This document shows, in pieces, positions 44,460 to 63,426 of a stretch of 64,000 bases of DNA (position 1 is its first letter; each line of letters opens with the position of its first letter). The notes beneath the pieces were generated by a model. It made no database searches and was not told the DNA's origin. It was given only the letters and a program-made list of their open reading frames with translations. Both the position numbers and the translations under genes were made by a program. Source of the DNA: Macrostomum lignano. Lineage: Eukaryota. The stretch spans positions 62,001 to 126,000 of the forward strand of contig NIVC01000092.1 in assembly GCA_002269645.1 (NCBI GenBank), given 5' to 3'.

Positions 44460-44790
44460 GTGTTTAAGTCACCAATTCGTCCCTTATCTTTGACGGATTC
44501 TCATTGGCTGTTTAAGGCACCAATTCGTCCCTTATCTTTGACGGATTCTCATTGGCTGTTTAAGTCACCAATTCGACCCTTATCTTTGACGGATTCCCAT
44601 TGGCTGTTTAAGGCACCAATTCGTCCCTTATCCTACATGCCTCATTGGCTGTTTAAGGCACCAATTTGTCCCCTATCATTGACGGATTCTCATTGGCTGT
44701 TAAAGGCACCAATTCGTCACTTATCTTTGACGTATTCTCATTGGCAGTTTAAGGCACCAATTTGACCTTTATAATTGACGGCTTCTGATT
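44460..44790. repeat. 48 bp minisatellite (~7 copies)
   Basis: Unit ggctgtttaaggcaccaattcgtcccttatctttgacggattctcatt. Confidence 0.9.
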
Positions 44791-45914
44791 GGCTGGCTGT
44801 CCCTTCTCCCCACAAAATGCTTACAATGCCCCCTTTTTAAGTATAACACATATTATCGTTTAATAAGTAACCAAAACAAAACAAACCAAAACAAAACAAT
44901 TAAAGAATTTTTACTTCAAGAAAACTTCATTTTTAACAAATAGTTAAAATATGATGTAGGTATATTAAATAGTTAAAAAGCAACATTGGAAAAAATATTC
45001 TTTTGAAGCTTTTCATCTGTATTATCTGTCAAAAATGTGCCAAAAATTTACGCAATCAAAACGCTTAAAAAAGTCTACTTGGCATTGCTATCAGATACGA
45101 GCTTTCGAAAGGCCGTTTTTGGTTCAGGAGGCAAAAGTTGAATTTACAGAGGAATAGCAATCATATTTCCCATAAGGGTTAGCTCAAATTAAGATAAAAA
45201 CGGTAGCATCTGTTGCTAATATTTCATATTTGATATGTAGCCCTACAAGTAAACGTGACGCACCTGTGTACAAGATGGTAAATGTTTGGTTATCTCGATG
45301 ACACAAATCTATCATCATAGATGTTTTCAAAATGATGCCGTTGAGGTTGAGCGACATAAAAACGAGCAGGAATGTTGACATTTGCTGTTCTAGAGTAAAA
45401 TGGTGTTTGATAAAAATAGATGCGCCTACATGACTGAGTAGTCATTACTGGTTACTGGTTCGATTCAGAGCACGTCTCAATTCTCAGCCATGAGTGCCAA
45501 GGCACAGAGAATGTACATGCCTGACGATTAGAACATCAGGACCTGATGTACACCCTGTGTGAGCGTGTGTATGAGTGCGTGCAGTTTTGGCGCGCTTTGT
45601 ATGTGCTCAGGAGCACAATATCGCCGAAGGCGTTGCGCCAGGGTGCCTGCAGCTCTCCTACAGACAATAATTAAATTAACCCCATATTAGGCTTGGTCCC
45701 TTCCAGGTTACGTATAAAAGAACACATAGAATTAAAAAGATAAATCAAACAGTTTTTCTATTTAAAAAACTTCTGAAAGCATACGTCGTTCAAAATTCCT
45801 AGAAACAAAGAGTCAAATTCCGATACTTCTGTTGCTCATGGCTCATGGGTTCCCTAAACTCTTGGATATTTTTGTGAGTATCTCTGCAAGCCTCAACAGT
45901 GCAATCAGAAAACT

Positions 45915-49491
<3,577 letters not shown>

Positions 49492-50336: not shown

Positions 50337-51945
50337 GGCCTCCTGCTGCCGACGACGCCCGTGACAACCTCACCCGCACCTACTCTTACTCTAATCGCAC
50401 GAGACACTTCGTCGAGGAGACTGTCCTGGAAATCAGGGACGCGGCTGCTAACTTCAGGCACACAGCCGCCTGGAGAGCTATCAATAACCTGACTGGCCGG
50501 AAACCGAGGCAGTGCACTGTCGTCGGTGCCAACTCTGTCGAGGACAGGAAGGCTAAGCTCGTGGAGCACTGCGGCGTGTGCTCAACACCCCTGCTCCAAT
50601 CTCGGCGCTCCTGCCTATGGCTGGCTTCTCCCCTGCTCGTAGTGAGGACTTCAACACCAGTCCTATCACAAACTACGAGGTTCGCACCGCCCTCAAAAGC
50701 ATGAAGCCTGATGCTGCTCCTGGCATCGATGGAGTCTTTCCCAGGGTCCTCAGACTCTCAGAGCTCAATTCGACCATCATTACGCTCTTCAATAAATATT
50801 CCTTTCTTGGAGGCGATGCCGGTGCCAAAGCCCCATCCATCTGGCGCACCTCCAAGATTATCTCAATCCCGAAAAAGTACCCTTTCCACCAGCTTGGACA
50901 ACCAGAGGTATCGCTCTGGAATGTACGCTCCCTACATGTAAGCTCCTCAATTCGATCCTGAGGTACAGTCTGCTGCCGATCATCAACTTCTTCTGCTGGA
51001 CGCTCAGAGTGATTTCCGCCCAGGCAGATCTACCGTCGAACAGATCGCTACCGTCCGCAGCATCATCGAGTCCTGCGTGACGCGGCAGAAGTCGGTGACC
51101 CTTGTGTTCATTGAATTCCGCAAAGCCTTCGACTCGAGACGATGGCTTCGTTGTCGTTTGGCGCCGCAGCTCGCGCTACCGTGAGATCACGCTGGCTGCC
51201 CTCGCTTTTGCCGACGACATTGCCCTGGTGTGCAGAGACCCTTCGGCCGCTCAATCACGTCTCAACAGGATCTGTGAGGAAGGCGCCAGAGTCGGCCCCG
51301 AAGTGAACGCTCGCAAGACCGAGGTGTTCCACGTCGGCATCAGGGACCCACCTGCTCTCACCCTCCCAAACGGCGAAGAAATCTCTTCCTGCTCGGACTT
51401 CCGCTACCTCGGCTCGCTTGTGGTCTCTCTGGACGACATCGTCACCGTCCGTCGCGCGCAAGCCTGGAGAGCTGCTCGGCAACTGAGCCCCATCTTTAGT
51501 TCGCCCGTGCCTGACCAAATCGAAATCAGGATTTTCCGAGCTGCCGTGGAGCCGAAATTCCTTTACGGTCTCGAAGCTCTGCCGGACACGTAATCTCGCA
51601 ATCAGGCTTTCGACACCACCTTCAGAGCTTTGCTGCGGTTTGCTCTCGACCTCCGCTACCCTGAAAGGCTGTCGAATCGCGCGCTCGCTGCTCGCTCCGG
51701 CGTCCCTCCAGTGAGCTCCATCCTTAGAGCGCGGAAATGATCCCACTTGCAGTCGTCGTGCTCAATCCGCCATGCGACCCATATCGTCGCGGACATGCGC
51801 GCACTGAGACGCTTCTAAAGGCCTTTTCTAGTGACCTTCAGGCTATCCACCTCACCCCGCTTGAGGCCACTTCCTGTCCCTCTGAGTGTGAGCGCTAAGA
51901 GTCTTTGACTCTTCAGTGTCTTTCTATCTATCTATCTATCTATAG
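50337..51945 (+). mobile_element. 5'-truncated, decayed non-LTR retrotransposon (RTE-like RT)
   Basis: Fragments ALKSMKPDAAPGIDG, KIISIPKK, FRPGRSTVEQI, VFIEFRKAF, AFADDIAL, FRYLGS, FLYGLEAL. Frameshifts and an internal deletion are present. 3' tail (CTAT)n at 51924-51943. Confidence 0.85.
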
Positions 51946-52254
51946 CATAAACTTTATTTTCAAATCATTTAGTAATTTTAGTTAGTCAAGTCAAAGGAAA
52001 TACACTTAGTAAAAAATGTAATGGGTTCCCCATCAGTCAAAGTCAGTAATATAGTGTCAGTCATTGGCAACTGTGGCCAATAATTAAGTCAATGTGAATC
52101 TCCGTTGGAGCTGAGGCTTGCACTAGATAATGGCAGAAATGCCTGGTTTGAGAGAAAAGTTCGAGAGGAGGAAGAAGTCATTCAGATGATGATCACTTAG
52201 CTAAGACTGTAGGCAAAGCCTCATGATCTTTATCTGAGAGAGCAACTCCTTACT

Positions 52255-55200
52255 TGTTGTACTTTTCGTAGTAACGAAGACGAATGCAAGATGCCGAGTT
52301 AGGAAGAGATCGTAGATGCCTGCAGCGCGTATATTTTAGCAGCGAAGTAGCTGGCTGCTATACTTAAAATATGAATAAGGCTTCACCCATAAACCATAGA
52401 ACTTAAAGTTCATACACAACACCCCCACATTTTAGTAATTAACCTGGAGAGAAATAAATGACTGTTTTCTACGAGCTATTTTGTCTAACGATCAAATAAA
52501 TCAGGAATAGGTCAGCCGATCAGGGGCTTTTCGGAGCCTCTGACTTCGACGAGAAACTTGGTACTCGGGACTTTGATCGCTGGTTGTCTCCACTTCAGCA
52601 GGAGTCGTAGTTTCCATTTCCTTATCATTGCTGCTGCCAACATTGGCAGGTCCAGGCGAGGTAATCTCTTGTGAGTTCTCTGTAGTCCTTGGCGTTGCAT
52701 CAGATGCATGGACAACCCGTCCTTTGCTGTCCAAGTAGGTATTTGATCCATGAAGTCCTTGGATTTCTTCTGGGACCTTGTCTGACTTTCCTTCTACGTT
52801 GATGTAGACAGGAATTGGGGTAGTTAGCGGTTTGTCCCATTCTGTAAAGGTTGCAGTGAGGCGCGTTCTTGGGCGTTGCATAAACAGTTGTGCAGCAGGA
52901 ATCGCTCCTTCGGAATTCGGTGTAGTGTTCTTCGAAAGGCAGAATGATATCAACACCTTCTCACATTCGGAACCTATGTCATTACTGTTCTGCTTCAGAG
53001 TCACTTTCAACTCTTGGATAGCTCTTTCCACAATCCCATTTGACTGGTGATGACCAGGTGGTGTTAAGACATGGTTAATTCGATTCTTCTTGAGAAATTC
53101 TGCGAACTCTTTTGATCGAAAATTGGTTCCATTGTCAGTCACAATGCACGTTGGAAGTCCCATGTACTTAAATGTTCGTCTGCATGCTGGAATAAGAGAG
53201 TTGGCTGTGAGATTGGACAGCTGATGTACATCAATCCACCGAGAGAAGGAGTCGATGAGAACCAAGAAGTGTTTCTCCTTGAAATATGCTATGTCCAGAT
53301 GAACACGTTCGAAGAAGAACTTTGCATCTTCCCATGAATGCAGATTTGCATTTGTTCGCTTTCTCGAATTTAGTTGGCAGGAAGGACACCTTTGAACGAA
53401 GCTATTGATCTGGGCGTCAATGTAAGGCCACCAGAAGTACTCTCGAGCTAGTCTGATCATGCGCACAATGCCCGGATGATTCTCGTGAAGAATTTGAAGA
53501 ATTTCTCTGCGCATGGACTTTGGAGGCACGATTCGGATCCCTTTGAACAGAATCCCGTTTTGAATGGAGTATTCCGCCTTGGATTTGGTGTACGGAAGTA
53601 GCTGTTTAGAAATGTAGCTTGGCCAACCTTGAGTAACAAACTTCTTGATAATATCAATTTCAGGGTCTCTGGTGTTGGCGACACGCCGAAGAATTGTCCC
53701 AGAAGAAGAAAATTCTACGAGAGAGTTTACCTCCAGCAGATTGACATCAAAATTTGAAAACGAAGTAGAAGCGTTTGTTGAAGGAATTCTGGACAGAGTA
53801 TCTGCTGCGAGCATGGTGTCTCCTTTTGAGTAAGTGACAGTGTAGTCATAGGATCTGAGCAGCAATGCCCATCTCTGGAGTCTCGCAGAAACTCGGTCAG
53901 GAACTTTCGTTGTAGAGAAGATGTACTGCAAAGGTATGTGATCAGAGATGATTGTAAAATGACGGCCTGCCAGAAATTGATGAAAATATTTTACACCCTC
54001 GATAATTGCAAGAGCCTCCCGCTCAATGTTGGCGTAGTTGGCCTCAGCCTTGGTCAAAACTTCTTTTTGGTCCGTGTCGTGGGACAGCACAAATCCGACT
54101 CCACTCTGAGAAGCGTCGCAAGTTAGAAACAACGGCCTTTTTATATCATAAGAAACGATTCGACCTTCCGTTACAGCAGCTTTCAGTTGGGAGAACGCAC
54201 TTGAGTGAACGACAGTCCATTTCCACTGAACCCCTTTCTTTAGGAGGTAATAGAGCGGCTTGGCGATCATAGAGAAGTTCGGACAAAAAATCCCGTAGTG
54301 TCTTAAGGTGCATATAGCACTTCTCAATTGATCCCGGTCTTTTGGCTCTGACAAGTTGGATAGAGCTTCCACTCTTGCAGGATCAGGCAAAAGTTTCCCA
54401 TCTCGGAGGAGAAATCCCAGAAATGTGACTTCTTTCTTGCACTCCTGAGTCTTACGCTCATTGATCTTGAATCCATGCTTTTTCAGTTTTTCCTTGACTT
54501 GCACCAGGATCTGTCGATGCTGCTCCACTGTTTCAGTGCCTAGAATGATGTCGTCCTGATAAGAAGCAGTGCCTGGTATTCCTTTGAGCAAGATATCCAT
54601 AACTTCCTGAAATATCAGTGGTGCTGCCGATATCCCAAATTGTAACTTGCGGAAGGCAAAATGTCCTACGTGGGTGGAAATACACGTAAGATCTTGACTT
54701 TCTGGCGTTAGGGGAATCTGCAAGAATGCGTCTTCGAGGTCGAGCACTGAATACACTTTCGAATTTGGGATCTTTTGAAGGATTTCTTTCAAAGTTGGCA
54801 GTCGATATCGATCTCGGTCTATCAGTCTGTTGAGAGTGACTGAATAGTCTCCACACAGTCTAATGGGTCTCTTTGATCCTTCTGGTTTCAACACAGGAAC
54901 AATAGGGCACGATACCTTAGGCGAGTGAACTGGGTAGATGATACCTGCACTTTCCAGTCTTTTCAGCTCCAGTTCAACCAAAGTTTTAATTGAGAACGGA
55001 AGGGATCTGGCAGGAAAGCACATTCCATCGGTAGAGGCCCCGTCCTTCAGGCGAAAGCTGGCCTGGAATCTTGAATTTTTATCACACTGCACTGGATGGC
55101 ACAGAAATTCGTCTACCGTCAATAGGTTGAAGGCACGAATAAAATTCATTCCCAAAATGGCTTGACTAGATGGGTCCCCGACATATATGTCTCCGCATGC

Positions 55201-56508
55201 CGTTTTGCCGTTTCTCAGCTCAATCGTGACGTCCTTAGCCATGCCTCGTACGGAAACTGAAGCTCCCCCGAAAACTTTGAGTGATCGAATGTCCGCGTCA
55301 ACCATGTGCAATCCGGCTTGCTCTACGATGGTTACTGGCAAAATTGTTACCTGACTACCAGAGTCGACGCACATATGGACTGTGGAATCACCGATCGTGC
55401 AGACTATTTTCCAGAGTTCGTCGCATGGAGTAGCCTTGATCACCGAGTACACAGCTGAATCAGGTGGATCAGCGTCGGTTGCTTCAACTTCCGCGTACGT
55501 GACTTTCTTGCTGCCACCGATGTTGGACCTGCATGCTCTGGCAATGTGCCCGGTTTTTCCGCACTTGTGACATGTCGCATTACGGAACTTGCAGGTATTT
55601 CTAAGATGACCCGGGTTACCACAGGAATGGCAGCTAGACTTAGAATGATTCGGCGTTGTTGGCATTGGCCTGGATACCGTTGGATACTTTTGGTTGCTGC
55701 CGGTCTTCTTGTGAGTGGTTTTCTGCACTGCTGCGACGGTTTTGCTCGAATCAGTAGCTTGAGATACGGACTCCGATAAGAGACTATCCTTAACCGCAGT
55801 CTCTAGATCCAGCTTTTCCTTCACTAGTAATTTTTGCTTCAGAGAATTATCAGCCAGTCCGAAAATATACTGAGAAAGAATTAACTCTTCTCGCAGGTTG
55901 CCGAATTCGCATTTGTTGGCCTGTGTCTTCAGTCTCTCCAAAAACTTTGTCACCGACTCACCCTGTATTTGGATCATGGTACGAGCGTATGTAGCAGATG
56001 TCTGTCGTAGTGAAGAAGGCGCTTGGGTTTCAAGTGGCTCAGTACCGCTTCTTTGATGAAATCGAACGTACACTTTGTATCGTTTAAAATGTCTTCTGGC
56101 TGCACAAGTGTCTCAATCAGTGAAAATGCGGCATCTCCACATGTAGCAAGTAGAACGGCTTTGCTCTGGTCATTCTTTTCCGTTGCGCAAATGTAAAAAC
56201 CGAGGCGCTTGAAATACTGTTCGACATCGGGGTAGCACAGCGGCATCTCCCCCAGTCGGAAGTCGAGTCCGGAAGACATCGGGATGAAGATTTGGTGACT
56301 GCAGTATCGTCCCGCGGCGAATTAAATTTTCCTCGTCGCCATGTTGTACTTTTCGTAGTAACGAAGACGAATGCAAGATGCCGAGTTAGGAAGAGATCGT
56401 AGATGCCTGCAGCGCGTATATTTTAGCAGCGAAGTAGCTGGCTGCTATACTTAAAATATGAATAAGGCTTCACCCATAAACCATAGAACTTAAAGTTCAT
56501 ACACAACA
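52255..56508 (-). mobile_element. Full-length Ty3/gypsy LTR retrotransposon (Mag-like), 4254 bp
   Basis: Identical 167 bp TG..CA LTRs (52255-52421, 56342-56508) and 5 bp TSD TTACT. PBS TGGCGACGAGGA, complementary to the tRNA-Ser(GCU) 3' end as I recall it. PPT-like aaatgtggggg. Two CCHC knuckles, protease VDSGS, RT YQDD, RNase H, integrase HHCC and DDE. Confidence 0.97.
52501..56279 (-). CDS. Gag-Pol polyprotein with a frameshift in gag near 55980
   Basis: ORF 56279-55974 (gag N-terminus) continues in the -1 frame as ORF ..-52501. Confidence 0.85.
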
Positions 56509-56963
56509 TTACTGATGAGAATTCCATTTGCAGCTGGTTGTCAGGAGCTGAGTTGACCTCCATTGCAAATGGAGATGTCAGCAGCTGGAACTTGGGAGTG
56601 CACTTCTTCACATCCTTGAACGGCATTGCAAATTCTTTTTAAAGTTCCTGCACCATGCTGATGCACAAGCGGATGATTGATTTCCTCTGGCTTGTAGCAA
56701 GTGTCCATTAGGAAGAAGTGTGTGTACTTCTGTTGACCTATCTGGCTTTCCCACAGGGGCAAAGCTTCACCTACATGTAGGAGTGCTTATACATGTATGT
56801 CACGAGGACGTCCCTGACTTGGAGAGTGTGTGGTTCAGTGCATTTAGATTTTCTATAAAGTCAGTGAGGAATGCCAGCTTAGCAATCCAAAGATCATTAA
56901 AGAAAAGATTGGCATTGAGAAACTTCTTGTTCACCAGAAATTCAGCTCTTCATCTCTTTCCTC

Positions 56964-56964
<1 letters not shown>

Positions 56965-57027
<63 letters not shown>

Positions 57028-57030
57028 TTC
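56965..57030. repeat. (TC)n microsatellite
   Basis: Direct reading. Confidence 0.95.
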
Positions 57031-57079
57031 TTTCTTTTAGGTCTAATTCTTTTAGCTTTTTCATCCCTATAATTATTAA

Positions 57080-58106
57080 CCATTTGGAAGCCAAAGGCCT
57101 GCACTGCAGGCCATACCGAAACGGCCCAGAAACCCAGAGATTGAAAAATGTCTATGGCATCAAAAACCATCTCCCAATCACTAAAGCAAGTGCCCAGTAT
57201 GGCCTGCTGTGCAGGCCATGACTGATTTAAAGACGTCCATTGTGCATTTCTATTGTGTTTTCATTCAAATGAGAAATGTTAAAGGGGAAATAAAGCGTGG
57301 ATGAATTAGCATGGATCTGGACAGAGACCAGGATTTCCGGGACATTGGCCGCAGCAAAATACTGTCTTCTTAGCTGGAACGTCAGGTTTCAAATTCGGAA
57401 TCGTTTGCTTGGGCGAGTCTGGGCTTCCGTTGCAGGGAGTCGTCCGTGTATATGTGGTATCCTTCGCCCAGCACTTCGCGGCTAAGCTCAACAACAACTC
57501 TCGCTCTCTTCCTCGCCATTTTCTGCACTCTCCTGCTGGAACTCCCTGACTGCCAACCACATTCGCTCATTGGTCCATGTGACAAGACGGTGGTGAGAAA
57601 CTCTTCAGTCAGGAAGATTGATAAAAATTATTTCATACTTTCGTCTGGATTTTCTGGTAGACCAGTGCTTAGATTGATGGTCGAAAACCCTGGGAATTCC
57701 GGCACCCCGTCGTGGTCAAACGAGTTGTCATTTCCAGGGGTTACTTCAACCCATTCCGCGGTCGCCTCATCTTGGCTCTGATCAATTTCTGGATCCATGC
57801 CTTCCGACTCCGTTTCTGACTCAAAAACCGTCGAGTCATTGCTTGATAAAGCGTCTTTCGAATCGGAATCGAGTCCCAGTCTACGCAAGGCGTCACTTTT
57901 AGCTGTCCTATTCGGCCGCGTAAAAGCCATTTGTGGGTAGGAAGGTTTGAACAGGAGCTAGCTGAAAAACTATGTGATATACTTTACTTCTGGGCTTCTA
58001 GAGTGTGCACTCGATTCAGCAAAAAAGACAAATTTGTCTATGGACTGCTCTGCAGGCCTTTGGGCTTTTAAGCCATCTTATAGAACCAAGCTTGGGCGCG
58101 AAGTGG
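57080..58106 (-). mobile_element. Internally deleted piggyBac (PGBD4-like) element, 1027 bp
   Basis: TTAA on both sides (57076-79, 58107-10). Imperfect CCA.TT TIRs and subterminal inverted ccaaaggcctgca motifs. Transposase fragments: acidic N-terminus, GEGYHIYTD, and CRD KKTVFCCGQCPGNPGLCPDPC. The paralogous site at ~44325 is empty. Confidence 0.85.
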
Positions 58107-59237
58107 TTAAAGCTTTTGAGCGATTTTGGTAAATCATACAACTATTGCTATTGCAGTACCAATTGGACTGTAACTCAATGTATGCAGAATTTTAAGAAAC
58201 ATTTCTTGCATACCAGTTATCTTTTTGTCTGATTGGTTGTTGACACACTAATTAGTCATTTAGCTTTGGCGGCTTCTGATTGGCTGTTTAAGTCACCGAT
58301 TTGTCCCTTGTTTTTGACGGATCCTGATTGGCTGGCTACCCAAGTGTCCCTCCTCCCCAAAAAGGCTTCCAATGCAGATTTCTTAAAGTAAACATATTAT
58401 TGCTTAATAAATAACCAAAACAACTGAGTTACAATTGAAAATGATTATTAACAAAGTCGAGTTATAAATATTACGCGTATGTAGGTAAATTGAATATTGG
58501 AAACAGCAACATTGTGAGAAATTCTTAGGAAGCACAGTCAGATGATATTATCTGTCAAAATTTTAGCAATTAGCAAAAAGGTTTCCGCAATAAAAACGTT
58601 TAAAAAATCTTACTTGGCAAAGCTATTAATGAAAAAGGCGCTTTTGGTTCAAGAGAAAGAAATTTAATATACAATGAAAAAGAAATCATATGAACTAAAA
58701 AATAACCGTTGTTATTATCAAATAAGATAAAAAGATGTCAATCAGGTTGATACAGCAGTATTTCGTATCATGTATATAGTCATAATGTATGCTTGAAGTT
58801 AGTGTACAAGGAAAAATAAATATTTGGTTATCTTGATGACATTTTACTAATCATAAACATGACATTTTCAAAATAATGCCCTTGAGGTTGATTGAGATGA
58901 CAACGAATAAAACGTTTACATTGCAAATGATAATCATTAAATTAACCGTACATTAGGCTTGACCCCTTCCAATCCAGGGGTTATTTAAGTACCACTTGAA
59001 GTAAAAAAAGAACTTTCTTTCTTTCAAAAAACTTCTGAAGGCCTGCGGCATAAAAAACCCTAGAAACTAAGTGTTAAAAAAGTTTTTGATCCCTAAATGG
59101 TTGAATAGCTTAAATAGGTTCCCTAAAATATTGGATTTTTTGCGAATATCTCTGCAAGCCTCAACAGTGCAATCAGTTTCCAGCTAGCCAGGTAAAATCC
59201 CAAAATAGAACAGGAAACTTCAATGCTGGAAATCTTC

Positions 59238-59822
59238 ACCGATGAAAACGGTACCTAATGCCAAGAAGTGTTCCGGATTCACTTGCGTCACCCAAGAATA
59301 GTTGCATATGACATAGTTAAAATTGAAAAGAATTGAGTCTAAACGACTCTAAAGCGACGAGGTGTCAGTGTGTCACGGTAGAAGTCGCCAAAAAGTCGTC
59401 AAAAAATCACCTAAGAATTACTTTGAAGCGTTTTATTATCTGCGACTGTGGGGCGACGGTATAGCTCGTATAACGACTCTGGTGCCGTAGAGTCGTATTT
59501 GAGTCATGCTAAATTCGATTCTAAAGTAGAATCACTGAGTTGTGTTTGAAGCGCATTTGCGTCGCTTGATAAATTAGAGTCACATCTCTAGCAAAAGTTA
59601 AGCACCAACACAATGATTCCTGGGCGACACTTTCGGGACTTTTTACGATTCTATAACTCACGTGAGCAACAGTTGCCTCACACGTCACATTAGACGCGTT
59701 TGAGTCGTTAAAAAGTCGCAAGTTAATTGAGTTCCCCCCAGAGTCGCTAGCTAGAGTCACTAGAGAGTTGTTTGCAACGACTTTTTAGTCATTCTTCTTG
59801 TCCTGGTAACGTTTTCAACGGA
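59238..59822. mobile_element. 585 bp MITE inserted at the last codons of paralogue B
   Basis: Imperfect TIR CCGATGAAAACG / CGTTTTCAACGG, 3 bp duplication TTC (59235-37, 59823-25), internal (aaa)gtcg(c) motifs. Absent from paralogue A. Confidence 0.8.
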
Positions 59823-62800
59823 TTCGTATGCTGGCGGCGGATGCTGAGGCATCGGTGGAATCTGCTGGGTGGGTGGCGGGTAATGCGGGTACTGCGGCTG
59901 ATTTCCCCAGCTGCTGACGCCGCCGTTGCTACTGCCATTAACCTGGGGCGGGTAAAGCGGGTATTGCAGCTGATTTCGCCCAACCCTGACGCCGCCGTTG
60001 CTACTGCCATCAACCTGGGGCGGGTAAAGCGGGTACTGCGGCTGAGTTTTCCCGCCGATCGCAGTCGGATAGAGCGGGTACGGCGCTGGATTCGGATAGA
60101 GATTGTTGCTTTGGCTGCGGTTGTTGCTGCGACGACGTCCATGTAAGCCGGACGGAGTCACATGCGCGTCCTCCTCAGTCTTGGCCACTGGCCGAAATGT
60201 GACATCCTGTCTGGCTGTCCCAGAAAAACTGCTGCCGCCCATTTTACGGAAGACCGATCGAACCCTGTCGCGACACAAATAAATTGTAATGCCGCAACCA
60301 GAAGCGACGAATAAAACGCCAAACAGCAGCCCCATGCCAAGTCCCACAGAGCTGAATTTGCCAAGCTGCTCCTTGAAGTCCTCCTTGCTGCAGCACATCT
60401 GGTGGCCAGCCGGGCCGCAGCAGTAAATGTCCTCGGCGTCGTAGGCGTAGTTGAACAAATCGCTGGGGCACAAGAAGTACTGGTAGGTCACGATTGGAGA
60501 AGTCGTGCTGCTGTCTGTGCTGTTTTCACTCTCTGTCAGTCTTTGAGCAGTGCTCGAGGCGGGGGTGGTTGACATTTCGGTTGGAGTCAACGCGCTGCTC
60601 GTACTGGAGTCATTTAACTCCAGATGGTCGTACGCGTACCAGCCATACGTCGAATTTGAACGAGTGCGAACCAAGCCGACGCAGATGGCGAAATCTTCGG
60701 TGACTTTGTTGAACAGGCTGCCTTGGCTGTTGAATATCCTGGGCCGGACTCTGGTGGCGATGTACACGGAGCCGGCTAGAAGCAGCGCCTTTTTGTTGCT
60801 GGTGAGACCGCTGCGGGAGGGAAGATCAAAGTTTCTTATTTCTTATTTCTTATTTCAGATATTTCATGCAAATTTAAAGCTCTCAAATGGTTCTTTTAAT
60901 TGCTATGCATGGGCCGTAAACCGTCTGTCCCCGGTATCTACCTACCTGTGTCTGTCCTCAAAATCCAGTGTTGGGCAAAGTTCCGGCACTTCCGGCACTT
61001 TTAGTACCGGAAGTTACTTTTTTTAAAGCGGCACTTTTTTCTAGTTCTTTTTGTAGAATGCCGGACTTCGGTAACGGAAGTTACTTTTTGATAAGTCCGG
61101 ACCTCCGGTACTTTATAATGAAATTTTAGGTGCCAAACAGTCAATTTAGCACTAAATATTTTCCAGAAGCGCAAAACTTTCACCAAAATTACAAAAAGGT
61201 AAAAAAAGATTATCCTAGATCATGTGGTTTTTACTTTTTAAGTTAAAACACGTTTTAAGCATCATATATAGAATCATAGAATGAAGTAATTAAATTGGTA
61301 ACTACTATAAATGCTGAAACAAGACACATTAAAAAATAAACATCATTGTTTTAACAACCCCTTGGAAGTTTTATAACAAGCATAACTAGCAGTACATTAG
61401 GACGCCACACTCGCGATTCGTGGAACATTTTTTGAAGGCCGATTTCTTCATTTCGATGTTCGTGCAGGACGACATGAGTGATGCATTCTAAGAAGGTTTT
61501 GAGCATGGCTTTGAGTTTTAACTTTTTTTAGACTAATTTTCATTTTCTGATTACAGCCCAAAAACACTAATCAAGTTATTTTAAAGTCTTGTGCATTGGT
61601 CCATCTATCAAATTCCAGCCATTTGTTGTCCGGCATTTTTTTGTTCATAGGCGTAGGAAAGTTTCAAAAAGTGGGGGGAGGCAGGTTCAGTGACGGATTT
61701 AGGGGGGGGGGGGGGGGCACAGGGCGCACGCCCCCGTCGAGTCAGATTTTTTATATGGAAAATGCACATTATCATGTACCGATTATTTTCAGAGTCCGTC
61801 GCGTCTTGTCAGCACTCATTTTATAAAGTGCTGCAGGCACCCATTTTAGCGCCGCAGGCACCCATTTTAGCGACGCAGGCACCCATTTTGGCGCTGCAGG
61901 TGCTATGTTTTGTCGCCCTGCAGCAAAATGCATTCATGCAAAGCAGCAAAAACTAAAAATAAGCAAAAATTCTACATTTTAAATTTAAATTGTGAAGGGG
62001 CCAGATACCATTACTGCCCCCCCCACTTTTTACTGCCCCACTGCCCCCCCCCGTTCCTACGCCTATGTTTTTGTTAACTGTTAACTGGCATTTCTAAGGC
62101 TCCCGGAATATTATTATTTATTCTAAATGAGTCAGCAGTACAAAAGTATACATACGCTGCTGTAAAACTACAGCACAATACTATTGCAAAGTAGGGCGAC
62201 AAGAGAATGGCCCACACAAACTAAGAGTCGCCTGAAGTATTCTACACTGATCATTGTGACACATCTATTGGACAAAAATTATCTCCATACATACTTCTGA
62301 AGAGTCAGAATCAATGTTTGAAAATCAGCCTCCAATTTTTTTATTTGAATCGTCCTGATGAACTGCTAATCTTTGTTTTGTAAAGGTTTTATTAATTCGC
62401 TCAAATTTTGGATGTGTTGATAAAAAAACCTTATGTAGCATCTTTATTTGAGGAATAACATCGTGTTTAACTCGAGACTCGAGACTCGAGACATGTTTAA
62501 GTACTTTTTAATTGGCGGTTCTTTAAAGTTAGAAAGGACCGGTGACGGAAGTACCGGAAGTTACTTTTTTTTAAAGTACGGGTACCGGAACAAGTGCCGG
62601 AAGTTACTTTCCTTGGAACCGGAAGTTACTTAACCGGAACTTGAGTCTGTCCTCAACACTGTCAAAAGTTCCCTCGTGTCTGTCCCCGGTATCTACCTGT
62701 GTCTGCCCCCAATATCTCCCCCATGTCTGTCCCCAGTATCTACCCGTGTCTGTCCCCGGTATCTACCTGTGTCTGTCCCCAATATCTCCCCCATGTCTGT

Positions 62801-63426
62801 CCCCAGTATCTACCTGTGTTTGTCCTCAATATCTCCCCAGTGTCTGTCCCCGGTATCTATACATGTACCTACCTGTGTCTGTCCTCAATATCTCCCCTGT
62901 GTCTGTCCCCGGTATCTACCTGTGTCTGCCCCCATCTCCCCCGTGTCTGTCCCCGGTATCTACCTGTGTCTGCCCCCAATATCTCTCCTGTGTCTGTCCC
63001 CGGTATCTACCTGTGTCTGTTACCTCGACAGTACTATGCTCTAGGGGACAAGTAATTTGCTTGTGTTGAATCCTTATACTTTGCAGGTTTGCACCAAAGC
63101 TCGATCTTTATCTCTCTGATTTCACGAGAGTATGTTTTCCCAAATCTAATACACCTTTTAAAAAGGATCTAAGAAGCTCGAAGTGGCTCACCCCATTTTG
63201 GTTGCCGAAACTTTTACCCGCGAGCTTTGTCGATAAACCAAGGGATAGACGCCCGACCGCATGGAATATCGGCGATAGTAACGTCTATATGTCCGGGAGG
63301 ATGAGCTGGGCCTGTACCTGAGGCTTCTGTACCTGTAGTGTCTGTATGATGACGAGTACTTGTAGCCCCTTGAACGAAAGCCACCAAATCTGCCTCCAAA
63401 GCCGCCTCGCCTTGCATCAGCTGGAT
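59760..63426 (-). CDS. Shisa/CX-like protein, paralogue B (signal-peptide exon expected just beyond 64000)
   Basis: Exons 63426-63192 and 60810-59760 have the same phases as paralogue A. One extra 24-aa YPLYPP unit. The last 20 aa are encoded by the MITE. Confidence 0.8.
60966..62661. mobile_element. Non-autonomous hAT-like element (1696 bp) in paralogue B intron 2
   Basis: Ends CAGTGTTGGGCAAAGTTCCGG and CCGGAACTT..CAACACTG. Imperfect 8 bp TSD tcaaaatc/tcaaaagt. Subterminal ccggaagttact repeats at both ends. Confidence 0.8.
61646..62067. mobile_element. 422 bp hAT MITE nested in the element above
   Basis: Perfect TIR CATAGGCGTAGGAA / TTCCTACGCCTATG and perfect 8 bp TSD TTTTTGTT. Confidence 0.92.
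62675..63020. repeat. Degenerate 22-24 bp minisatellite homologous to 47260-48430 (also 60922-60965)
   Basis: tgtctgtccccggtatctacctg-type units. Confidence 0.9.

What the first reader, a model, noticed from the sequence alone, without database searches (positions are those of the whole stretch)
59220..59830. MITE insertion rewrote a protein C-terminus and created a PDZ-type ending
Paralogue A ends [10 protein letters not shown]-stop. In paralogue B a 585 bp element with a TTC duplication inserted at the Glu codon. The old tail EDFQH-stop is stranded at 59220-59237 and the frame now reads PPPAYE-SVENVTRTRRMTKKSLQTTL-stop from MITE sequence. The PPxY motif is preserved and the new end T-T-L fits the class I PDZ ligand consensus (S/T-x-hydrophobic). 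Some Shisa proteins use PDZ-binding tails. This is a possible TE exaptation giving one duplicate a new interaction, though a chance match is quite possible.
Basis: partly seen in the sequence, partly recalled or inferred. Interest (0 to 1): 0.72.

Follow-up and report, generated by a model that had tools for sequence, protein, structure and literature searches.

The report
Transposon insertion rewrote a flatworm protein tail
A small mobile DNA element landed in the last codons of one copy of a duplicated Shisa-like membrane-protein gene of the flatworm Macrostomum lignano and replaced its last four amino acids with twenty element-encoded ones; this is real and old, but it is an ordinary kind of event and nothing shows that the new ending is a working PDZ-binding signal.

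Summary
The window is Macrostomum lignano contig NIVC01000092.1. A 585-bp element (59238-59822) sits after the Glu codon that follows PPPAY in paralogue B. It has 17-nt terminal inverted repeats and a TTC duplication. Paralogue A and its homeologue have a clean empty site.

The element is non-coding and folds back on itself. A diverged partial copy lies at an unrelated site, so it belongs to a dispersed MITE-like family.

A second genomic copy of B, on contig NIVC01002188.1, carries the same insertion at the same site. It encodes the same tail with one amino-acid change. The insertion therefore came after the A/B duplication and before the B/B' split.

GenBank already annotates both proteins with the QTTL ending. 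Those gene models come from RNA-seq transcripts.

The exaptation reading is unsupported. The tail (1 difference in 63 nt) is no more conserved than the introns (3.2%). The motif [ST]x[VLI]-stop closes 2.5% of random reading frames in this window.

The most likely reading is a tolerated replacement of the C-terminus and 3' UTR that keeps the ancestral near-terminal PPxY. Interest is low to moderate.

The parts
59238..59822 (.). 585-bp non-autonomous TIR element (MITE-like), absent from paralogue A and A'
   Evidence: Four-way alignment with the empty sites. No protein match in any of six frames. RNA fold z = -5.1 with the termini paired. Matches itself in inverse orientation. Enriched 10-35x for AACGACTC and AAAAAGTCG motifs in both orientations.
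59235..59237 (.). Target-site duplication TTC, left copy (GAA; first codon of the stranded old tail)
   Evidence: A and A' have one GAA.
59823..59825 (.). Target-site duplication TTC, right copy (GAA = the Glu codon after PPPAY, still translated)
59239..59255 (+). Terminal inverted repeat arm CCGATGAAAACGGTACC
   Evidence: I1, 17 nt, 88% complementary. The same terminus begins the related copy in L003-L005.
59805..59821 (-). Terminal inverted repeat arm CCGTTGAAAACGTTACC; translated as (S)VENVT
59760..59822 (-). Element-derived coding tail SVENVTRTRRMTKKSLQTTL plus stop codon TAG (59760-59762)
   Evidence: Identical to the end of GenBank PAA91257.1. 62/63 nt identical in B'.
59220..59237 (-). 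Stranded ancestral tail EDFQH-stop, now beyond the element
59823..60810 (-). Host-derived part of the last exon of paralogue B (Cys-rich module, TM segment, Pro-rich tail, PPAY)
63192..63426 (-). Exon 2 of paralogue B (Arg/Ser/Tyr-rich region). Exon 1 lies just outside the window.
59432..59437 (-). AATAAA hexamer inside the element, about 320 nt after the new stop and kept in B'; candidate poly(A) signal (inference only)
45915..46866 (-). Last exon of paralogue A with the empty site (GAA at 45930-45932), ending [10 protein letters not shown]-stop

Best explanation
A non-autonomous cut-and-paste DNA transposon (MITE-like, 585 bp, 17-nt TIRs, 3-bp TSD) inserted into the coding strand right after the Glu codon that follows the near-terminal PPPAY motif of one of two tandem Shisa-like genes of Macrostomum lignano. 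This happened after the A/B tandem duplication (dS about 0.2) and before the split of the two present-day copies B and B'. Translation now runs from the host exon into the element's TIR and subterminal sequence. It reads 20 element-encoded residues and stops at an element TAG. The old last four residues, the old stop and the old 3' UTR are pushed 585 bp downstream. The element thus supplies the C-terminus, the stop codon and the start of the 3' UTR, and possibly a poly(A) signal. The gene stayed intact and expressed, and the ancestral PPxY (WW-domain-type) motif is kept. The new tail is most probably a tolerated passenger. Its T-T-L ending matches the class I PDZ pattern, but nothing indicates that this is more than chance. 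Shown: the insertion, its TE nature, its age relative to the duplications, the intact ORF in two copies, and the transcript-based annotation. Inferred: translation of the tail in vivo, the 3'-end role, and neutrality of the tail.
For: Anatomy: insertion, TSD, TIR and empty sites. TE family: a second, partial copy in intron 1 of a distant paralogue gene. Its homology starts exactly at the AC[C/T]GATGAAAA terminus, its flanks are unrelated and it lies in the opposite orientation; nhmmer E = 5e-12 to 2e-9. The element is non-coding and folds back. Age: the shared insertion in B' has the same site and the same TSD. dS(A,B) is 0.19-0.21 against dS(B,B') of 0.077. Gene still under some constraint: dN/dS is 0.54 for B-B' (Fisher P = 0.04) and 0.48 for A-B (P = 0.001). 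Expression: GenBank models BOX15_Mlig015544g1 and BOX15_Mlig032636g1 both end in QTTL, and that annotation was built from StringTie/TACO RNA-seq transcripts with TransDecoder ORFs (PMC5730564). Ancestral design: the distant paralogues end ...PPPAYPGPM and A ends ...[10 protein letters not shown], so PPPAY lies 4-5 residues from the end. No sign of selection specific to the tail: the tail has 1/57 aligned nt different, against intron 2 at 3.2% (P = 1.0). The PDZ pattern has a 2.5% chance rate.
Against: The tail is far less diverged than the rest of the element: 1/57 against 65/411 aligned positions, Fisher P = 0.002. Indels and substitutions start right after the new stop codon. One could read that as coding constraint on the tail. 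No RNA reads, poly(A) sites or peptides could be inspected here, so read-through rests on the provenance of the annotation. Only one extra family member was found, and it is partial, so copy number, TSD rule and superfamily are open.
Confidence: 0.72

Rival explanations
1. Exaptation. The element-derived tail was retained because its free T-T-L carboxy-terminus is a class I PDZ ligand. It would give paralogue B a scaffold interaction that A lacks, which is neofunctionalisation after duplication.
For: TTL fits [ST]-x-[VLI]-COOH, the pattern cited for Shisa PDZ-binding ends (PMC10531659). The tail should be cytoplasmic, because it follows the single TM segment of a signal-peptide protein (inference). 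The last 12 residues are identical in B and B'. Divergence rises steeply just after the stop.
Against: 2.5% of random stop-terminated frames in this window fit the pattern. Tail conservation equals the intron background (P = 1.0). The single change is non-synonymous. The basic tail also fits other short motifs (RxRxxT, RRxT) by eye, which shows how cheap such matches are. Shisa membership is only sub-threshold. No binding or expression data exist.
Confidence: 0.07
2. The main consequence is regulatory rather than on the protein. The element replaced the 3' UTR, giving a new stop, a structured foldback RNA and an internal AATAAA. That would change the mRNA stability, localisation or polyadenylation of B relative to A. 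The peptide tail would be a by-product.
For: AATAAA about 320 nt after the new stop is conserved in B and B' within an otherwise diverged stretch, while A and A' have no AATAAA or ATTAAA within 900 nt of their stop. The element RNA folds with z = -5.1. In B' the old 3' UTR has decayed: 13 lineage-specific changes against 1 in B over 77 four-way aligned columns.
Against: In B the old 3' UTR is almost unchanged, so it may still be used. No poly(A)-site data could be examined. The poly(A) signal usage of M. lignano was not checked.
Confidence: 0.15
3. The QTTL protein is an annotation product only. Mature mRNA would avoid the element (cryptic splicing or an upstream poly(A) site), or paralogue B would be a decaying, barely expressed duplicate.
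For: The CDS was called by TransDecoder on genome-guided transcripts. Reads may multi-map between B and B'. The gene IDs were absent from the supplementary expression tables that could be searched. dN/dS of about 0.5 is only modest constraint.
Against: Two independent loci keep the whole ORF, including the tail, open and without indels. The junction has no good splice donor (read by eye). dN/dS is below 1. Both loci passed the filtered 'coregenes' transcript set submitted to GenBank.
Confidence: 0.06

Closest known systems
MITEs / non-autonomous TIR DNA transposons inserted in coding exons (TE exonisation that creates new C-termini)
   Same: Small size, TIRs, a TSD, subterminal short repeats, foldback potential and no ORF. 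The insertion in a terminal exon supplies new codons, a stop and 3' UTR sequence. This is a well-known class of event (own knowledge).
   Different: The superfamily is unassigned. A 3-bp TSD of TTC is not the TWA typical of PIF/Harbinger, and the termini are not CACTA-like (own knowledge, not tested against Repbase or Dfam). Only two independent sites were seen here. The M. lignano GenBank annotation pipeline excluded transcripts overlapping its repeat annotation, so the retained gene models suggest the element was not annotated as a repeat there (inference).
Shisa / Shisa-like single-pass transmembrane adaptors (STMC6 group of Pei & Grishin 2012, as cited in PMC10531659)
   Same: Signal peptide, Cys-rich extracellular module with CC pairs, one TM segment, and a Pro-rich cytoplasmic tail with [LP]PxY. 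UniRef names the proteins 'CX domain-containing' and names a distant paralogue 'Shisa N-terminal domain-containing'.
   Different: The Pfam Shisa_N score is 18.9 bits against a cut-off of 22. There is a long Arg/Ser/Tyr-rich N-terminal region. No homologue was detected outside M. lignano in 1.8-5.8 billion proteins.
[quoted passage not shown]
   Same: T at -2 and an aliphatic residue at the carboxy-terminus of a cytoplasmic tail.
   Different: Those ends are described as a subfamily motif in the source paper. This one is TE-derived, restricted to one paralogue of one species, and untested.

Membership tests
MITE (miniature inverted-repeat transposable element) | Terminal inverted repeats at the exact ends of the inserted block | tested here: met
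   17-nt arms, 88% complementary, at 59239-59255 and 59805-59821. They coincide with the boundaries defined independently by the empty site.
MITE (miniature inverted-repeat transposable element) | Target-site duplication, with an unoccupied homologous site carrying one copy of the target | tested here: met
   TTC on both sides of the block; a single TTC/GAA in A and A'.
MITE (miniature inverted-repeat transposable element) | Small size and no transposase coding capacity | tested here: met
   585 bp. The six-frame translation found nothing among 5.8 billion proteins at E <= 10. The longest internal ORF is 79 aa.
MITE (miniature inverted-repeat transposable element) | Many dispersed copies forming a family | tested here: inconclusive
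   One further independent site was found, present in three homeologous loci (L003-L005), partial and 70-83% identical. It starts at the same terminus. No whole-genome search was possible, so copy number is unknown.
MITE (miniature inverted-repeat transposable element) | Relationship to an autonomous element or superfamily | not testable with these tools
   No Repbase or Dfam library and no full M. lignano genome were available.
Shisa-like transmembrane adaptors | Shisa_N / CX cysteine-rich module recognised by the family profile | tested here: inconclusive
   PF13908 scores 18.6-18.9 bits, below the cut-off of 22, and covers profile positions 16-41 of 50.
Shisa-like transmembrane adaptors | Signal peptide, single TM segment, Pro-rich cytoplasmic tail with a PY motif | tested here: met
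   Read directly from P0002 and P0004: the MKAAVFCIAAVFLTIIFS leader, the [24 protein letters not shown] segment, and YP-rich repeats ending in PPPAY. No dedicated TM or signal-peptide predictor was run.
Class I PDZ-binding C-terminus | [ST]-x-[VLI] at the free carboxy-terminus | tested here: met
   T-T-L-stop. The chance rate is 2.5%.
Class I PDZ-binding C-terminus | Evolutionary constraint on the terminal residues beyond background | tested here: inconclusive
   B and B' differ at 1 of 63 nt in the tail, which equals the intron and exon background of 3.2-3.9%. No other species was available.
Class I PDZ-binding C-terminus | Demonstrated binding to a PDZ domain | not testable with these tools
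   Needs an experiment.

The most novel reading that the evidence does not exclude
The element-encoded tail is a selected gain. It would give paralogue B, in both homeologous copies, a PDZ-scaffold or basophilic-kinase-regulated interaction next to the retained PPxY. A MITE terminus would then have turned a WW-only adaptor into a dual WW/PDZ adaptor soon after tandem duplication. The sharp rise in divergence immediately after the new stop codon would then mark the end of the constrained region.
Probability: 0.07. Interest if true: 0.5.

Novelty: new member of a known kind. Interest (0 to 1): 0.25.

Why it matters
This is a clean, datable example of a DNA transposon rewriting the C-terminus and 3' end of one member of a young gene pair in a flatworm model. 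The empty site is preserved in the sister gene, and the filled site is preserved in two homeologous copies. If the tail proved functional, it would be a tidy case of TE-driven divergence of duplicates. As the evidence stands, it documents ordinary, probably neutral, TE exonisation. The resulting protein is already in the public annotation, although its transposon origin is not noted there.

Tried and rejected
1. I searched for other copies of the element in the window by blastn and TIR pattern. None was found.

2. I searched the six-frame translation of the element against 5.8 billion proteins, looking for exonised or ORF-called copies elsewhere. There was no hit. The search is blind to pieces as short as the 20-aa tail, because even P0002 and P0003 did not score.

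3. I looked for expression data by gene ID (Mlig015544, Mlig032636, Mlig002360) in full texts and in the supplements of four M. lignano papers. Nothing was found.

4. I tried to sample more of the genome through the LTR-retrotransposon Pol ORF. That protein is not on record.

5. Rfam and tRNA scans of the element and of the related copy found nothing above noise. A tRNA-derived SINE origin is therefore not supported.

6. A four-way MAFFT alignment of 700 nt of 3' flank misplaced B' and was discarded. The counts from alignment A1 were used instead.

7. I first took the low divergence of the tail against the rest of the element (P = 0.002) as a sign of purifying selection. I rejected that as decisive after seeing that introns, exons and the 5' flank share the same low rate.

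8. I considered precise excision from A instead of insertion into B. I rejected it because A, A' and the distant paralogues all have PPPAY 4-5 residues from the end with no footprint.

9. I considered that splicing removes the element. No plausible donor follows the GAA codon, and both annotated transcripts read through.

10. I left the third protein-database search unused. The likely gain, a few more element copies, did not justify the cost.
Full report
**Source of the window.** A search with the last exon of the gene in question returned only four proteins, all from the flatworm Macrostomum lignano. One of them, PAA91257.1 (BOX15_Mlig015544g1, 446 aa), is 100% identical to the query. It is encoded on contig NIVC01000092.1 of assembly GCA_002269645.1. 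Window coordinate + 62000 gives the contig coordinate (derived).

**The observation.**
- The minus strand of 59760-60810 is the last exon of a three-exon gene, here called paralogue B. Exon 2 is at 63192-63426, and exon 1 lies just beyond the window.
- B ends ...[29 protein letters not shown]-stop.
- A tandem paralogue A, about 13 kb downstream on the same strand (last exon 45915-46866), is 72% identical. It ends ...[13 protein letters not shown]-stop.
- The alignment shows that B carries exactly 585 extra bases (59238-59822). They are flanked by TTC on both sides, where A has one TTC (the GAA Glu codon).
- After the extra block, B continues with GAA GAT TTC CAG CAT TGA (EDFQH-stop, 59220-59237) and with sequence homologous to A's 3' UTR.

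**Is the block a transposable element?**
- Its ends are 17-nt inverted repeats (CCGATGAAAACGGTACC and CCGTTGAAAACGTTACC, 88% complementary). They lie precisely at the boundaries defined by the empty site.
- The interior is packed with short motifs (AACGACTC, AGAGTCG, AAAAAGTCG) in both orientations. They occur at 10-35 times the window's frequency. From general knowledge, this is the usual look of subterminal transposase-binding repeats.
- The element matches itself in inverse orientation (nhmmer E = 1e-7). As RNA it folds far better than shuffled controls, with the termini paired (z = -5.1).
- It has no coding capacity. A six-frame translation hit nothing in 5.8 billion proteins, and Rfam and tRNA scans were empty.
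- No second copy exists in the window.
- I fetched the loci of a distant paralogue of the host gene for another reason. A diverged partial copy of the same element turned up in that gene's intron 1, in all three homeologous loci.
- In that copy, homology begins exactly at the terminus AC[C/T]GATGAAAA[C/T]G[G/A]TACC. It covers 53 nt at about 83% identity plus a central block (nhmmer E = 5e-12 to 2e-9). Its flanks are unrelated, and it lies in the opposite orientation relative to its host gene.
- The block is therefore a member of a dispersed family of non-autonomous TIR elements, and 'MITE' is a fair name.
- Copy number, the generality of the 3-bp TSD and the superfamily could not be established here.

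**Age of the insertion.**
- A second M. lignano contig (NIVC01002188.1, locus L001) carries a collinear copy of the whole region, B' followed by A'.
- B' (PAA60154.1, BOX15_Mlig032636g1) has the same element at the same site with the same TSD. There it is shortened to about 485 bp by internal deletions. A' has the empty site.
- B' ends PPPAYESVENVTRPRRMTKKSLQTTL. It differs from B by one non-synonymous change (Thr to Pro) in 63 nt.
- With dS(A,B) about 0.2, dS(B,B') 0.077 and dS(A,A') 0.02, the order of events is: tandem duplication, then insertion into B, then duplication of the whole segment.
- The segment duplication fits the known redundancy of this assembly, described as 180-312 Mb of duplicated blocks (PMC5730564).

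**Is the tail expressed?**
- I could not inspect reads.
- The GenBank annotation of this genome was built from genome-guided RNA-seq transcript assemblies (StringTie, TACO and TBONE), with ORFs called by TransDecoder. [quoted passage not shown]
- Both B and B' are in that set, with a CDS that runs into the element and ends at its TAG.
- That is indirect but real evidence that transcripts read through the junction.
- The gene is not obviously decaying. dN/dS is 0.54 for B-B' (P = 0.04 against neutrality) and about 0.5 for A-B (P = 0.001).

- Between B and B' the tail differs at 1 of 57 aligned positions. The remainder of the element differs at 65 of 411 (15.8%), rising from 7% just after the stop to 22% at the far end, with 14 indel events. 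Taken alone, this looks like constraint (Fisher P = 0.002).
- However, the whole gene body shows only 3.2-4.0% divergence. That holds for introns, exons and the 5' flank alike, so the tail is indistinguishable from intron 2 (P = 1.0).
- What is unusual is the high divergence of the stretch from the new stop codon to about window 58364, not the conservation of the tail.
- An outgroup exists for the old tail and old 3' UTR, in the form of A and A'. There the excess lies on the B' lineage: 13 specific changes against 1 in B over 77 columns.
- I cannot explain this step. A gene-conversion or recombination boundary between homeologous copies is my best guess.
- The conclusion is that the available comparison has no power to show selection on the tail.

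**The PDZ idea.**
- T-T-L-COOH does fit [ST]-x-[VLI], the pattern quoted for Shisa PDZ-binding ends. PY motifs are a feature of the Shisa family (PMC10531659).
- The host protein has the Shisa-like layout: a signal peptide, a Cys-rich module, one TM segment and a Pro-rich tail with PPAY.
- Its Pfam Shisa_N score is below threshold, 18.9 against 22 bits.
- An exhaustive HMMER search found relatives only in M. lignano.
- Those distant paralogues end ...PPPAYPGPM. A PPPAY 4-5 residues from the C-terminus is therefore the ancestral design. In B it now lies 21 residues from the end.
- In this window, 137 of 5464 stop-terminated reading frames (2.5%) end in [ST]x[VLI].
- Of the six ways the element could be read, one gives such an ending.
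- The same basic peptide also fits other short motifs by eye, such as RxRxxT. The match carries little weight.

**Verdict.** The exaptation and PDZ part is neither supported nor excluded. I give it about 7%, and about 15% to a mainly regulatory (3'-end) consequence. The most likely reading is a tolerated replacement of the C-terminus and 3' UTR. This is a new member of a well-known kind of event, and interest is about 0.25.

Noticed in passing
window 58364-59759 versus L001 14653-15700: There is a step in divergence between the two homeologous copies. The gene body, with its introns and 5' flank, differs by 3-4%. From just after the new stop codon through the element and the old 3' UTR, divergence is 7% rising to 22%, with many indels. 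Where A and A' serve as outgroup, the changes lie on the B' lineage (13 against 1). It may be a gene-conversion or recombination boundary; it remains unexplained.
   Followed up: partly
window 51566-58333 (LTRs 52255-52421 and 56342-56508): About 6.8 kb is present here but absent from the homeologous locus L001. It contains a Ty3/gypsy-type gag-pol reading frame (52501-56279) between two 167-nt direct repeats that are 100% identical, so it is probably a very recent LTR-retrotransposon insertion.
   Followed up: partly
L005 16049-16340 (also L004 14539-14830 and L003 17385-17675): A partial, diverged copy of the same element family sits in intron 1 of a distant Shisa-like paralogue. The second terminus was not found. 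The sequence that follows looks tRNA-like by eye, but ARAGORN calls nothing.
   Followed up: partly
window 47258-48419 and 62670-63020: There are minisatellites in intron 2 of both paralogues. A has 48.5 copies of a 24-nt unit at 90% match. B has a related, more degenerate 23/47-nt array. Array length differs between the homeologous loci.
   Followed up: no
window 59875-60053 (and the matching part of A, A' and B'): The Pro-rich cytoplasmic tail is built from a 72-nt coding repeat ([12 protein letters not shown][DN]GSSN[GR]GVS...). Its copy number varies among the four genes, which accounts for A at 420 aa against A' at 468 aa.
   Followed up: no
window 59432-59437: AATAAA lies inside the element about 320 nt after the new stop and is kept in B' although the surrounding sequence has diverged. 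A and A' have no AATAAA or ATTAAA within 900 nt of their stop.
   Followed up: partly
protein P0001 (UniRef A0A1I8GV03): This 565-aa model, known here only from UniRef, fuses the front of a B'-like gene to a whole A-like last exon. It is evidently a chimeric gene prediction across the tandem pair. Its B-like part differs from both B and B', which hints at a third copy or allele.
   Followed up: no
window 59238-59822: CpG observed/expected is 1.33 in the element against 0.66 for the whole window.
   Followed up: no
window 44461-44795: A 48-nt tandem repeat with 7 copies at 85% match lies downstream of paralogue A.
   Followed up: no
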